Shown here one piece after another: positions 41,601-47,433 of a DNA stretch of 64,000 nt. The notes beneath the pieces are model-generated. The model saw only the letters and a program-made list of their open reading frames with translations, was not told where the DNA came from and ran no database searches. The position numbers were made by a program, and so were the translations under genes. Numbering within the stretch: position 1 is the stretch's first letter; every line of letters begins with the position of its first letter. Source of the stretch: Magallana gigas (taxonomy: Eukaryota). Location of the stretch: positions 41,044,001 through 41,108,000 of the forward strand of contig NC_088857.1 in assembly GCF_963853765.1 (NCBI RefSeq), written 5' to 3'.

Positions 41601-44600
41601 GCCACAAATCAAATATTTTTTCATCAGGAAATATATAAGAAACCACCACCAAAGAAAAAAAGAAATTTTGACAGAGATGGAAGAGGAGGTGGCCATAATA
41701 ACCATGACAAGGGAAACAATAAAAGGAAAATGCAGTCTCGAGATCACAACCCTGATCAACCCAAGAAAAAGCCCTTACTTAAAACTCCAATGGAGGAAAG
41801 ACCCATATGTAGATTTTACAAGGAGGGAAAGTGTCAAAAGGTAAAGATTTTTTGGAAGTCTGTTCTGATTTTTTTTATTGTTAACCGTGTTTTCCAACGG
41901 AAAAATCCGGTTATTAAAATGGTGAAAATGGCGGGCGGGCGGCTGCCAAAAGGGTACCCTCATTGTACGGATAACTCCTCCTACAGTTTTCAAGATAGGA
42001 AGTTGTTCTTTTGCAGATCAATTGTACATATATCAGAGGTGTGCATATTGCTAGGATTTTGATTTCCGATAATTTATCAAAATAATACCAGCTTTTGAAC
42101 TTAGTCATTTTTTGGCAAAATATTTCATATAGGGTACCCTCATTGTACGGATAACTCCTCCTACAGTTCTCAAGATAGGAAGTTGTTCTTTTGCAGATCA
42201 ATTGTACATATATTAGAGGTGTGCATATTGCTAGGATTTTGAATTCTGATAATTAATCGAAAAAATACCAGCTTTTGAACTTAGTCATTTTTTGGCAAAA
42301 TATTGCATATAGGGTACCCTCATTGTACGGATAACTCCTCCTACAGTTCTCAAGATAGGAAGTTGTTCCTTTGCAGATCAATTGTACATATATCAGAGGT
42401 GTGCATATTGCTAGGATTTTGATTTCCAATAATTTATCGAAAAAATACATGTACCAGCTTTTGAACTTAGTCATTTTTTGGCAAAATATTGCATATAGGG
42501 TACCCTCATTGTACGGATAACTCATCCTACAGTTTTCAAGATAGGAAGTTGTTCTTTTGCAGATCAATTGTTCATATATCAGAGGTGTGCATATTGCTAG
42601 GATTTTGATTTCTGATTATTTATGAAAAAATACTAGCGTTTGAACTTAGTCATTTTTTGGCAAAATGTTGCATATAGGGTACTCCATTTCACTGGATATG
42701 GGTTGACATGGATTATGGATACAGTTCGCATAAAAGAAAACCTGGTTTGCTGTCACATTGACAGCTTTTCACTTGTTCATTTTTTTTTTAAATGCTAGAG
42801 AAATTTGTTTTTGATAAAGAGGTGTTGATTTCAGTGTTTTGATACCATTTTTCACAATTGTAAATGGGGTAAATATAGAATTCCAATAATAATCAATTGA
42901 CTGTTCTCTTTTATAGGGGAGTGATTGTCCATTCAACCATGAGAAAATGCCAAAGAAACCAGAACTCTGCAAATACTATTTGAATTCCTATTGTTCCAAA
43001 GAAGATAACTGCATTTTCATGCACAATATCCTTTCTAAAATTTCAAAAAAAAAAAGAAAAAAAAAAAAAAAAGATGTTTTAAAAGTTTTGTTTTTTACCT
43101 GCAAAGGCTTGATATGCATTAAGAAAAAAAATCCAAATGTTGTGTGTAATATTCCTTAACTGATGTAAGTGAATTTCCTTGCAAGTTCTTTCATACTGGT
43201 CAAGAATGCTATGGCGGAGATAACTGTAAATTCTCACATGATCCTCTTACAGATGAAACGAAGCATCTAATTGAAAAGGTAAGAAATGATTGTGACAGGA
43301 GAATTTTCTTGAGAAATACCTATGTGTTTGAACAAAATTATTATACTGCCAATACCTTAATTACAGAGGTACAGCAACCATGACCATGATGCTGAATTTG
43401 AGGAGGACAGACAGAGAAACAAAAATCGACCAAGTTTATTAGGTATGTGTTACTATATTAAACCAAACTTCTATTTTCCTTTATTTTTATGTCGGTCTGT
43501 CTGTTGGTCGGTCGGTCCACCAACAGTTTCCGTTCATTTTCTTCGCAGAGGATGACCATATTGAAATGAAATTTGATATACAGGTCTATCATGATAATAT
43601 CTAGGTCAAGTCCGATATTGGGTATGATAGAGCTATTTTCCACAGAGTTATGGCCCTTGGACGTAGAAAAATTCTAGTTTTTTGCAGTTTCCGTTCATTT
43701 TCCTCGCAGAGGATGAACATATTGAAATGAAATTTGGTATACAGGTTTATCATGATAATATCTAGGTCAAGTTCGATATTGGGTATGATAGAGCTATTTT
43801 CGACAGAGTTATGACCCTTGGACGTAGAAAAATTCTAGTTTTTTGCAGTTTCCGCTCATTTTCCTCACAGAGGATGAACATATTGAAATGAAATTTGGTA
43901 TACAGGTTTATCATGACAATATCTAGGTAGAAAAATTCCAGTTATTTGAAGTTTGCGTTCATTTTCTTTGTGGATGTTTCCAAGGGAGGGGGGCATAAGT
44001 GTTTCACAAACATCTCTTGTTTCATAGATTTTTTTTTTTTGAGTAATGTTACATTGACTAGTATTGGTTTAGATCAACCGATAATCTCACTATTTATAGG
44101 TGTTTTTTTTATGAATGGCACATGTACCGGTAGTACTTCTTGGACAAAGATGAAATTCACAGTGCATTGTAAAATGTAGATCATTTAAGTTTGCAAGACA
44201 TGCAAATATTTCTGTTTTTTTCAGGATCTCCTCCAAGACACTTACTTGTAGACCCTGCTGTTCAAGAGAGAATAAAGAAAATTCCATCCATATTTGATAT
44301 TGAAACACACCCACCAAATCAAAGTCCCAACAAACCAAGTGGACATGGGGGTCCACCAAACATGATGCACCCTCCTCACATGCAACCTCCCAGGTGGGCT
44401 TAACAGTGTAATTCAGTATCGATCATAAAATTTTAATAACAAAGAAAATTTAGATTCATCATATGTTCTAATGTTATTTAACTCTACACAAAGACCATAC
44501 CATTTATTTGTTTGTAGGCCAGGATTTTACAATGAAATGAATATGAACCGCATGCAAGGCCCAGGACATCAAATGAACCAAGGTCCTCCTGGACATATGG

Positions 44601-47433
44601 GACCGATGGGCCCAATGGGTCCCATGAACCAAGGACACATGATGGGTCCCAGAGGGCCTATGAACCAAGGCCCGCACATGGGACCACCAGTTTCCTTGCC
44701 CGGACCAATGATGGGTCCTCCACGAATGATGAATCAAATGAATCCAGCTCTGAATCCTGCTGTGGCATTAGTTGGGGCATTACTACAACATGCTGCTGGG
44801 GTGAGGCAGCCCAATGTATCTGCTGGAGGGCCAATGCCCAACCAACAAGGGGGGAATTTCCAAGGTCCCGGTGATCATCAAGAGGGACCATTTGCAGGGC
44901 ATTCAGACCAAAACAAACCTTTCCAGGAAGTAGATAATCAAGGCCCTGGACCACAATCAGGTGATGATATGGAGGAACAGAATCAAACATTCCAAGGCAG
45001 CAGCAGAGACAGAGGTACAGCATGTTACTTGATGATATTATACAGTGTATTTAATGAAAATGTGTCATTTGATATATATGGGTAATCGATTCATTTTGTT
45101 TCAGATGGTGATGGTAGTAAGAGAGATGATAAAATGAAAGACGCAGATCCAAATAAAGAAAAACTGGCAATGCTTGGAATTGAAACTGATGAGTACTTAA
45201 CATCAAACCAAAGAGAACTGTTCCAAAGAATCAACAAGACCTCAGAGGGAAAAGAAGAAACAAAAGAAAACCAAGAAACAAACTCCAAGTCTGATAACAA
45301 CACGGAGAGTGATTCTAAAGAGAAAGGTAAAGAGACGAGAATACGATGACAGTCTTTTGCAATTACGTATATGTACATTATCAGCAATTTCTATCTAATA
45401 TTAAGATATAAATTTATCAGTTACACAGAATATGTATTTAAATTATTTTCATTTTGCTTATTTCACAGTTTATGTGTTCTTTTTTTTTATAGTTGAGGAT
45501 GACAACTGGTACTCAAGTGATGAAGAGGATCAAAAAGATTCCAAAAAACTGACAGATGTACTCAAGAACATTAACCGACAAGTAAGTACAAATGATGCAA
45601 GTTATCTTAAAGGAATTTTACAAGTACTTAAAGGAAGTTCATGATGAATAAAAAAAGAGCTTGTTGATAAGATTGCAGTGAAGATATAAATTATTGTCTC
45701 TCTTCTTGTTTCAGTCTTCCACTCCACTCAGTCCACAGTCAAACAATCCTCCCTCTAGCACTCCAAGCACCATGAACATCATGCAAATGATTAATGCTAT
45801 CAAAACTAGTAGCACTGGGGCTACCTCACCTCCAATCAAGTATGTTTATAATACTTATATGTTTATTTTATCTCTTAATTGTTATGTTGATATACAAGTA
45901 GATTTTTACTTTTAAAAAAACCCCAGCAGACTTGTTGATAAATCACTTTTACTTTAGGATGTAAAATACATTTGTAAAATGCAAATGTTTTTCTTATCTG
46001 TAATCTATTATCATTGCCTCTAAAAGGTTTGTCCTCCTCATAAATATATGTGTTGATTATTATTTGATTATTGTATGTTTTGTAGCTCTACTGCTTCTAT
46101 GCCTAGAGATCCAAGAAAAAGACAAGATCCAAGGTCATTTGGTAAATCGGGGGATAAATCAACTCCTCCAATCATTCCCATAGAATCTCAAGACACTCCA
46201 TTTGAAGCCCCTCCTCCAGTGTTTATAACTTCAAGTGAAGGTGATGTGGTGTGGAATGTCATACCAGTGACAGTAGAACGTTCTCCTAAAACACCCCCCA
46301 CAGGTGTCAATCTCTCTGATCCAAAGTACAAAAGTGATCCAAGGGTTCAAAAACTGTTAAAACACATAGAAGCCACAAGGGGTCAGACTGCAGATAATAA
46401 AACAGATGTTCAGAAGCAGGTTGATCCTCGTACTGGCCAGCCTGTCAAAGCGGGGGCTTCCCAAGGAGATCCTCGCTTAAAAGCTGGAAGTGATTCTGTA
46501 AACCAGTGGGATCCACGTCTCGGGCGAACAAATTCTGATTCAGGTGCTCGTGCTGGTGACCCAAGGTTACAGCGTACTCCTTTAAATCCACCAATGGGTG
46601 TTCAACCAGTGAGACCCACATTGGATCCCAGAATGGGCAGACAAAACAGTCAATCTGACAATTTAGGTTCTGTGGACCCTCGCTTCTCAAGGCAAAATAG
46701 TTTAAGTGGTATGACAAGGCCTGCTGACCCTAGAATGGGAAGGCAAATATCTGAACAACCTGTAGAACAAAGGTCACCAGGGCTTCTGCCTACACCCCCC
46801 ATACCTCCAATGCCAGCAGCCATAGCAAATGATCCAAGACAAAGCAGTGATCCAAGAAAGTTTGGTAGACAGAACTCGACTCCTGATCCAAACAGTGCTA
46901 TGTTACCTGACTTAAGTCTCAAACCTCTCGGTGAACCATTAATTAATCCAAAAACTGATTTGTTATTAGATGAAGAAAGTCTTCAAAATATGACAATGGA
47001 CAGGCAGCTTAGTCAGTCTGATTCAGAGAAGGGAGGTGGAGATCCTGCAGACAAACCCAAACTAGACTACCGCAATGATCCACGCTTCAAGCGAAAACCA
47101 GCCACTAAACGAAAAGGAAGTATGGAGTATGCCTCCCCGCTAGACAGAGAAGAGCCAGGACAGGATAATGTGTCAAGCTATAACAGTTACAATCGTCCCC
47201 CACCAAATAATCCACCCAAAACTGATCCCCGAATGAACAAAAGTGATCCAAGGACAATGCCCAAACCAGAACAGAAAGTAGCTCCAGAAAGTGTAAATGT
47301 GGCTCCAGCTGTGGACAATGAAGCAGGGGGCTTAACTCCTCCTGGACCTGACTTGGCTTTTGCATCAGAAGCTGAAATTAACACAAAAGATTTCTTTAAG
47401 ACTATGGATCCCACAGCATCACCATTTTGTTAG
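38666..47433 (+). CDS. ZC3H4: CCCH zinc finger protein ZC3H4/ZC3H6 family (Suppressor of sable / Restrictor subunit homolog), 14 exons, about 1375 aa
   Basis: Exons 38666-39338, 39515-39696, 39865-40079, 40415-40514, 41628-41840, 42917-43025, 43169-43278, 43367-43442, 44225-44393, 44518-45014, 45105-45326, 45493-45581, 45715-45839, 46086-47433; total 4128 nt. Three tandem CCCH fingers ([58 protein letters not shown]), [17 protein letters not shown], many DPR motifs and C-terminal DPTASPFC. Co-ortholog of vertebrate ZC3H4/6. Confidence 0.92.
40952..41113. mobile_element. 162-bp C-run MITE with 5-bp TSD
   Basis: TIR CATAGGCGTCGGAA / TTCCGACGCCAGTG (2 mismatches); CTCAG at 40947-40951 and 41114-41118; in ZC3H4 intron 4. 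Confidence 0.88.
41870..42777 (+). mobile_element. Helentron-type non-autonomous element (HINE) carrying a 180-bp tandem array (4 full units plus a partial)
   Basis: 5' subTIR/IR hairpin AACCGTGTTTTCC..GGAAAAATCCGGTT, then (GGCG)n; units start at 41951, 42131, 42311, 42497, 42676; 3' subTIR GAAAACCTGGTT, palindrome GCTGTCA-CAT-TGACAGC (42749-42765), end CACTTGTT; T-rich flanks without TSD. Confidence 0.85.
43026..43168 (+). other. U12-type intron with apparent AT-AA termini, ZC3H4 intron 6
   Basis: 5' splice site ATATCCTTT; perfect branch site TTCCTTAAC at 43152-43160. Only a junction after 43168 (..TGTAA|GT GAA) keeps CCCH2 in frame with CCCH3 ([14 protein letters not shown]). Confidence 0.85.
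43484..44021 (+). mobile_element. Helentron-type element with 161-bp satellite-like monomers (2 full plus 1 internally deleted)
   Basis: (GTCG/GTCT)n microsatellite at the 5' side; monomers start at 43524, 43685 and 43846; 3' box GGGGGCATAAG, hairpin TGTTT-CAC-AAACA, end CTTGTT. The 5' box is largely deleted. The monomer resembles the oyster Cg170-type satellite (from memory). Confidence 0.8.

What the first reader, a model, noticed from the sequence alone, without database searches (positions are those of the whole stretch)
43026..43168. Non-canonical AT-AA minor intron splitting the CCCH array of ZC3H4
Perfect U12 donor (ATATCCTTT) and branch site (TTCCTTAAC), but no AC at the expected distance. 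The only frame-preserving 3' end is ..GTAA|, 8 nt after the branch motif. Using the AG one base further shifts the frame to a stop within the next exon, removing finger 3 and the whole DPR region (seen). AT-AA is a rare documented U12 subtype (established). Competition between adjacent AA and AG acceptors could act as a built-in productive/NMD switch that ties Restrictor levels to minor-spliceosome activity (inference). Gene predictors will probably mis-model this junction.
Basis: partly seen in the sequence, partly recalled or inferred. Interest (0 to 1): 0.72.

Follow-up and report, generated by a model that had tools for sequence, protein, structure and literature searches.

The report
Oyster ZC3H4 minor intron ending AA
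This is a real, efficiently spliced U12-type (minor-spliceosome) intron in the oyster ZC3H4-like gene whose last base is A, not the usual C. It is a one-letter variant of an ancient intron already catalogued in human ZC3H4, ZC3H6 and ZC3H8, so it is ordinary, and the data show no sign of a built-in NMD switch.

Summary
The intron at 43026-43168 (143 nt) starts ATATCCTTT, has TTCCTTAAC 8 nt before its end, and ends AA.

- **RNA evidence:** 5 and 13 junction reads in two poly(A) libraries, plus a 3,424-nt transcript contig with no mismatches, join 43025 to 43169. This gives in-frame ...[14 protein letters not shown]... Support is about equal to the two neighbouring GT-AG junctions.
- **DNA evidence:** a DNA-run contig reproduces the AA.
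- **Frameshifting junction:** no junction using the AG at 43168-43169 reached the listing threshold.
- **Orthologues:** at the same codon position, the intron is AT-AC in Saccostrea (identical branch-to-end spacing), Argopecten, Mercenaria, Physella and Ptychodera. It is AT-AT in seahorse ZC3H6.
- **Literature:** published tables list human ZC3H4, ZC3H6 and ZC3H8 as AT-AC U12 introns at this junction. A 2006 paper records an AT-AC/AT-AT switch at human versus mouse ZC3H6. AT-AA is the commonest non-canonical minor-intron type.

So this is one more case of terminal-base switching in a known conserved intron. The NMD-switch idea is unsupported. The expectation that gene predictors mis-model this junction is borne out in relatives. 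Low interest.

The parts
42917..43025 (+). Exon A (109 nt): end of CCCH finger 1 and the whole of finger 2 (…[19 protein letters not shown]), plus the first base of the split codon (phase-1 intron follows)
   Evidence: Translation. Pfam zf-CCCH, 28 bits. RNA contig piece 42915-43024 with 0 differences, and an upstream loose end that reads the previous exon (…[10 protein letters not shown]).
43026..43168 (+). U12-type (minor) intron, 143 nt, with AT-AA termini
   Evidence: Joint that skips 143 nt: 5 + 13 raw RNA reads and one RNA contig. Orthologous U12 introns lie at the same codon position in 6 other species.
43026..43034 (+). U12-type 5' splice-site motif ATATCCTTT
   Evidence: the only copy in the window. 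The same motif lies at the same place in all orthologues. It is complementary to the AAGGAGA stretch of this genome's U6atac snRNA (pairing judged by eye).
43046..43075 (+). A-rich low-complexity tract inside the intron
   Evidence: read laying skipped 43036-43084 as a repeat, so neither DNA nor RNA support was obtained for this stretch.
43152..43160 (+). U12-type branch-site motif TTCCTTAAC, 8 nt upstream of the 3' junction
   Evidence: It is complementary to GUAAGGAA in this genome's U12 snRNA. Saccostrea has the identical motif and identical 8-nt spacing.
43167..43168 (+). 3' terminal dinucleotide AA (AC in the orthologous introns)
   Evidence: The assembly and DNA contig X3 record 8 agree. 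Saccostrea has …TTAC|GTGAA where this oyster has …GTAA|GTGAA.
43168..43169 (+). Overlapping AG (last intron base plus first exon base). Use as an acceptor would shift the frame by -1 and give a premature stop in exon B
   Evidence: frameshift to stop. No such joint is listed.
43169..43278 (+). Exon B (110 nt): CCCH finger 3 ([23 protein letters not shown]…)
   Evidence: Pfam PF22623 zf-CCCH_9 'KIAA1064-like', 58 bits against a cut-off of 27. RNA contig piece 43168-43276. Single copy in the genome.
43279..43366 (+). Next intron, an ordinary GT-AG intron (88 nt), used as an internal comparison
   Evidence: Joint 43276 to 43365 (cut +2), GT..AG, 6 and 20 reads.
43367..43442 (+). Exon C (76 nt), followed by the GT-AG intron 43443-44224
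   Evidence: Joint 43440 to 44223 (cut +2), GT..AG, 3 and 14 reads.

Best explanation
The intron 43026-43168 is the oyster orthologue of an ancient, conserved A-type U12 intron. That intron sits one base after the final histidine codon of CCCH finger 2 throughout the ZC3H4/ZC3H6/ZC3H8 family.

Inferred from motifs, not shown: U11 and U6atac recognise the ATATCCTTT donor, U12 recognises the TTCCTTAAC branch site, and the 3' cut is placed by distance from the branch site.

In this oyster the last intron base is A where relatives have C. This is a single-base subtype switch from AT-AC to AT-AA. The position of the junction, the reading frame and the protein (H-S-E-F-P-C, as in Saccostrea) are unchanged. 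In poly(A) RNA the intron is removed about as well as its GT-AG neighbours.
For: - **Junction used in RNA.** 5 reads in X21, 13 reads in X22 and a 3,424-nt contig in X17, all giving CAC-A|GT-GAA. Neighbouring GT-AG junctions have 6/20 and 3/14 reads.
- **Little retention.** Intron-body depth is 0 (X21) and about 2 (X22), against exon depths of about 6 and about 20.
- **DNA agrees.** A DNA contig reproduces the AA.
- **Minor spliceosome present.** The genome carries a U12 snRNA gene (126 bits) and a U6atac gene (90 bits) with the expected pairing stretches.
- **Orthologues at the same phase-1 position.** All begin ATATCCTT. Saccostrea, Argopecten, Mercenaria, Physella and Ptychodera end AC. Seahorse ZC3H6 ends AT (protein P0071 reads H-S-E-Y).
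- **Same spacing in the nearest relative.** Saccostrea has the same 8-nt gap between TTCCTTAAC and the junction.
- **Gene identity.** The last exon is 84% identical to the Saccostrea 'ZC3H4-like' protein. Exon B matches PF22623 'KIAA1064-like'. The gene is single copy.
- **Literature.** Human ZC3H4, ZC3H6 and ZC3H8 are listed as AT-AC U12 introns with …GCAY-N|ATATCCTTT donors (PMC8280824 and PMC6717393 supplements). Human ZC3H6 is AT-AC where mouse is AT-AT (PMC1557818 Table 3). AT-AA is the most common non-canonical minor terminus in animals and plants (PMC10639083).
Against: - No experiment shows that the minor spliceosome does the cutting. That rests on motifs and orthology.
- The read aligner leaves a 1-nt ambiguity: skipping 43025-43167 or 43026-43168 gives the same mRNA. 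The AT-AA reading is chosen by the consensus and by orthologues.
- The DNA run used (X3) may come from the assembled individual, so fixation of A in the species is not shown.
- Only about 1% of each raw run was read, so a rare alternative junction cannot be excluded.
Confidence: 0.9

Rival explanations
1. The adjacent AA (43168) and AG (43169) acceptors compete. AG use gives a frameshifted, NMD-targeted mRNA, so ZC3H4 (Restrictor) dosage follows minor-spliceosome activity.
For: The AG overlaps the junction, and its use gives a stop in exon B with many junctions downstream. NMD could hide such transcripts in steady-state poly(A) RNA. In human cells A-type minor introns, the ZC3H4 intron among them, are more retained when CENATAC or ZRSR2 is impaired (PMC8280824). 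So a general dependence on the minor spliceosome is real.
Against: No 43025-to-43170 joint was listed in either raw-read run (threshold 3 reads), against 5 and 13 reads for AA, and no contig carries one. The AG is an automatic by-product of the C-to-A change before an exon that starts with G. It is not a conserved feature: the orthologues have AC|G or AC|A. Any gene with a minor intron depends on minor splicing without needing a tandem acceptor.
Confidence: 0.05
2. Assembly or base-call error: the true genomic end is AC and the intron is an ordinary AT-AC one.
For: The mRNA junction sequence would be identical either way. All other molluscs examined have AC.
Against: DNA-run contig X3 record 8 covers 43085-43526 at about 16x with 0 differences. 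No 'other letter' row is shown at 43167-43168, although that table is truncated (746 more rows are not shown).
Confidence: 0.03
3. The intron is removed by the major spliceosome, or at the alternative register (43025-43167, AA..TA), and the U12-like motifs are coincidental.
For: The aligner's first-listed register is AA..TA. Each 9-mer alone is expected about once per window by chance.
Against: Both motifs are conserved at the same places in seven species spanning molluscs, a hemichordate and a fish, and in human paralogues classed as U12. There is no GT/AG pair and no polypyrimidine tract before the 3' end.
Confidence: 0.02

Closest known systems
The AT-AC U12-type intron of human ZC3H4, ZC3H6 and ZC3H8 (catalogued in the MIDB paper PMC6717393 and the CENATAC paper PMC8280824)
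   Same: Same gene family. Same position, one base after the C-x3-H histidine codon of the second CCCH finger. Same ATATCCTTT donor and a TCCTTAAY-type branch site close to the 3' end.
   Different: The last base is A instead of C. The host is an oyster with a single family member.
Subtype switching at the 3' terminal base of U12 introns (Sheth et al. 2006, PMC1557818). It includes ZC3H6: human AT-AC versus mouse AT-AT
   Same: A one-nucleotide difference at the intron border between orthologues, with the junction and frame kept. Here it is AC in Saccostrea and AA in this oyster, and AT in seahorse ZC3H6.
   Different: The new terminal base is A rather than T, and the lineage is a bivalve.
AT-AA minor introns as a class (A-type / AT-AN introns; PMC10639083, PMC8280824)
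   Same: AT start, AA end, U12 donor and branch motifs. This is the most frequent non-canonical minor-intron type in animals and plants.
   Different: Nothing in kind. This is one more instance, here with RNA-read support.

Membership tests
U12-type (minor spliceosomal) intron | 5' splice-site consensus /RTATCCTT at the first intron bases | tested here: met
   ATATCCTTT at 43026-43034, exactly at the RNA-defined junction.
U12-type (minor spliceosomal) intron | Branch-site consensus TCCTTAAC close to the 3' end (roughly 10-15 nt from branch A to the junction, from established knowledge), with no polypyrimidine tract | tested here: met
   TTCCTTAAC at 43152-43160. Branch A is 9-10 nt from the junction, at the short end of the range but identical to Saccostrea. 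The sequence between is TGATGTAA.
U12-type (minor spliceosomal) intron | The host genome encodes minor-spliceosome snRNAs | tested here: met
   U12 (RF00007, 126 bits) and U6atac (RF00619, 90 bits), both above the gathering score. Pairing stretches are present. U11 and U4atac were not searched.
U12-type (minor spliceosomal) intron | Removal depends on the minor spliceosome (U11/U12/U4atac/U6atac) | not testable with these tools
   Needs knock-down or in vitro splicing.
U12-type (minor spliceosomal) intron | The intron is actually spliced at the predicted borders | tested here: met
   18 raw junction reads in two libraries plus one RNA contig. A 1-nt register ambiguity was resolved by consensus.
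AT-AA subtype | First two bases AT and last two bases AA in genomic DNA | tested here: met
   The assembly plus DNA contig X3, with 0 differences over 43085-43526. Independence of X3 from the assembled sample is unknown.
Orthologue of the ZC3H4/6/8 family U12 intron | Same codon position and phase in a homologous protein alignment, with U12 motifs in the relatives | tested here: met
   Six species all have H-codon + 1 nt | ATATCCTT. Human entries come from paper supplements.
ZC3H4-like (KIAA1064-like) CCCH protein | Three tandem CCCH fingers including the KIAA1064-like finger, and the conserved C-terminal end | tested here: met
   PF22623, 58 bits on exon B. The last exon is 84% identical to Saccostrea 'ZC3H4-like', ending …DPTASPFC as in all full-length relatives.
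   No such joint is listed at a 3-read threshold in two poly(A) libraries, and no contig carries one. Low-level use masked by NMD is not excluded.

The most novel reading that the evidence does not exclude
The C-to-A change created an overlapping AA|G / AG acceptor pair. Under reduced minor-spliceosome activity, or in particular tissues or stresses, the cut slips by one base to AG. The resulting NMD substrate would lower ZC3H4 (Restrictor) dosage in an oyster-lineage-specific way.
Probability: 0.05. Interest if true: 0.45.

Novelty: new member of a known kind. Interest (0 to 1): 0.15.

Why it matters
Its main value is practical, for annotation. The junction is non-canonical, so ab initio gene models can break finger 3 of an essential transcription-termination factor. 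Public models of relatives do break there.

It also adds a bivalve data point to two known patterns. The ZC3H4-family minor intron is conserved across bilaterians, and the 3' terminal base of A-type minor introns drifts (AC, AA, AT) without moving the junction. It opens no new question.

Tried and rejected
- **Shifted register 43027-43169 (TA..AG).** It would give H-N-E-F-P-C, like most vertebrate proteins. Rejected: the reads give CAC-AGT-GAA, not CAC-AAT-GAA.
- **Other in-frame 3' ends every 3 nt**. None is seen in RNA.
- **Paralogues in the same genome for an internal comparison.** Only one copy exists; the second hit is an unrelated weak CCCH match.
- **The species' own annotated protein, and other Crassostrea-type oysters, to date the C-to-A change.** Neither protein search showed them. 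The tools say that records of the window's genome or close relatives may be left out. So whether this junction is already annotated in the source genome is unknown.
- **Loci that were mRNA, not genomic.** P0005 was not on record. P0008 and P0032 turned out to be transcript contigs without introns. They were useful only for the junction codon.
- **Chance tests of the single 9-mers** are uninformative on their own.
- **Earlier scan notes.** Nothing near this place. A word search returned only unrelated U12 notes elsewhere in the genome.
- **Intron-retention comparison.** The 61-nt depth bins are too coarse for more than 'low, and not higher than the neighbouring 88-nt GT-AG intron'.

Full report
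**What is there**

The window comes from an oyster. The sequencing runs that hold it are labelled as an oyster species or 'oyster metagenome'.

On the + strand, between about 38666 and 47433, lies a multi-exon gene for a ZC3H4-like protein:
- Exon B (43169-43278) matches Pfam PF22623 'KIAA1064-like CCCH zinc finger' at 58 bits against a cut-off of 27.
- The last exon (46075-47433) is 84% identical to the C-terminus of the Saccostrea cucullata protein named 'zinc finger CCCH domain-containing protein 4-like'.
- It ends with the …DPTASPFC tail shared by all full-length relatives.
- The finger-3 exon occurs once in the 564-Mb genome.

**Check of the observation**

- Exon A (42917-43025) ends …ATG CAC A.
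- The next nine bases are ATATCCTTT (43026-43034).
- TTCCTTAAC lies at 43152-43160, followed by TGATGTAA.
- The bases at 43167-43168 are AA.
- Exon B starts GT GAA TTT CCT TGC.

Removing 43026-43168 gives …[16 protein letters not shown]… in frame. Taking the AG at 43168-43169 as acceptor shifts the frame to a stop inside exon B.

Each 9-mer alone is expected about once per window by chance. The case therefore rests on position, RNA evidence and orthology.

**RNA and DNA evidence**

The stretch 42650-44450 was laid against two raw-read poly(A) RNA runs, one RNA contig set and one DNA contig set.

| Junction | X21 reads | X22 reads | Other support |
|---|---|---|---|
| 43024 to 43168, skips 143 nt (1-nt ambiguity; same mRNA as removing 43026-43168) | 5 | 13 (10 start places) | 3,424-nt RNA contig, depth 350, no mismatch |
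| 43279-43366, GT-AG | 6 | 20 | same RNA contig (X17, depth 350) |
| 43443-44224, GT-AG | 3 | 14 | same RNA contig (X17, depth 350) |

- The AA junction is therefore used about as much as its neighbours.
- No joint using the AG one base further on is listed. The threshold is 3 reads or a contig.
- Depth inside the intron is 0 (X21) and about 2 (X22), against exon depths of about 6 and about 20. Retention is low.
- A DNA contig (X3, record 8) covers 43085-43526 without a difference, so AA is not an obvious assembly error. That run may not be independent of the assembled animal.
- The A-rich tract 43036-43084 was skipped by the tool.

**Minor-spliceosome context**

The genome has a U12 snRNA gene (126 bits) and a U6atac gene (90 bits). 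Their sequences contain GTAAGGAA and AAGGAGA, the stretches that pair with the branch site and the donor. The pairing was judged by eye, from established knowledge of these snRNAs.

**Orthologous introns**

Genomic loci of relatives were fetched through protein hits. In every one the intron sits one base after the histidine codon of finger 2 and begins ATATCCTT.

| Species | Termini | Bases after the branch motif |
|---|---|---|
| This oyster | AT-AA | 8 |
| Saccostrea cucullata | AT-AC | 8 |
| Argopecten irradians | AT-AC | 10 |
| Mercenaria mercenaria | AT-AC | 9 |
| Physella acuta | AT-AC | 9 |
| Ptychodera flava | AT-AC | 8 |
| Hippocampus comes ZC3H6 | AT-AT (its protein reads H-S-E-Y) | 12 |

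The pairwise alignment with Saccostrea shows …TTAC|GTGAA against …GTAA|GTGAA. The oyster intron therefore differs from the ancestral state by the last base. The overlapping AG exists only because the exon starts with G.

**Literature**

- Supplements of PMC8280824 and PMC6717393 list human ZC3H4, ZC3H6 and ZC3H8 as AT-AC U12 introns, with donors placed after the same …GCA(C/T)-N context.
- PMC12750831 treats ZC3H8 as a U12-intron gene.
- PMC1557818 Table 3 records ZC3H6 as AT-AC in human and AT-AT in mouse. It also notes that such non-conserved borders differ at a single position.
- PMC10639083 reports AT-AA as the commonest non-canonical minor terminus in animals and plants.
- PMC8280824 shows that AT-AN introns are a class with higher basal retention and CENATAC dependence.

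**Interpretation**

The most likely account (about 0.9) is an ordinary, conserved A-type U12 intron with a single-base AC-to-AA subtype switch that is neutral for the product.

- Shown: the junction, the frame, the motifs, the snRNA genes and the orthology.
- Inferred: that the minor spliceosome does the cutting, and that the 3' cut is set by distance from the branch site.

It remains possible only at a low level, masked by NMD (about 0.05).

- An older Mizuhopecten model (P0028) reads 'DIL…' into the intron and drops most of finger 3.
- A Lymnaea model (P0148) reads 'HILFISIN' into the intron.
- P0023 skips the end of finger 2.

I could not see this genome's own annotation.

**Limits**

- Only about 1% of each raw run was read.
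- No second oyster of the same subfamily could be fetched, so the age and fixation of the A are unknown.

**Verdict**

The feature is real and validated, but it belongs to a known kind in a gene family where this intron, and even its terminal-base drift, are already documented.

Noticed in passing
window 42650-42780 and 43500-44050: Intronic stretches with enormous summed contig depth (10^4 to 10^5) in both DNA and RNA runs, many variants and many chimeric joints. These are high-copy interspersed repeats flanking the CCCH exons.
   Followed up: no
window 41914-42567 (- strand ORFs): Two tandem copies of an element whose minus-strand ORFs repeat the same peptide ([24 protein letters not shown]…), inside the intron upstream of exon A. 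It looks like a duplicated repeat unit.
   Followed up: no
L012:4465-4544 (Hippocampus comes ZC3H6): The orthologous minor intron appears to be AT-AT (…GGCTGAAT|GTGAA), consistent with the annotated protein (H-S-E-Y). It parallels the AT-AT reported for mouse Zc3h6 in PMC1557818.
   Followed up: partly
proteins P0028 (Mizuhopecten), P0148 (Lymnaea), P0023: Public gene models that break at this junction. They translate into the ATATCCTT… intron (DIL…, HIL…) or skip part of a finger, even where the intron is canonical AT-AC.
   Followed up: partly
window 46075-47433: The 452-aa last exon is full of DPR(x) repeats. It has no Pfam match, yet it is conserved to the C-terminal …DPTASPFC in molluscs and beyond.
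   Followed up: no
window 44094 and 44215: A 3-nt and a 1-nt deletion relative to the window, present in both the RNA-library contig (X17) and the DNA contig (X3). Both lie in the intron just upstream of the exon that starts at 44225. Probably allelic indels.
   Followed up: no
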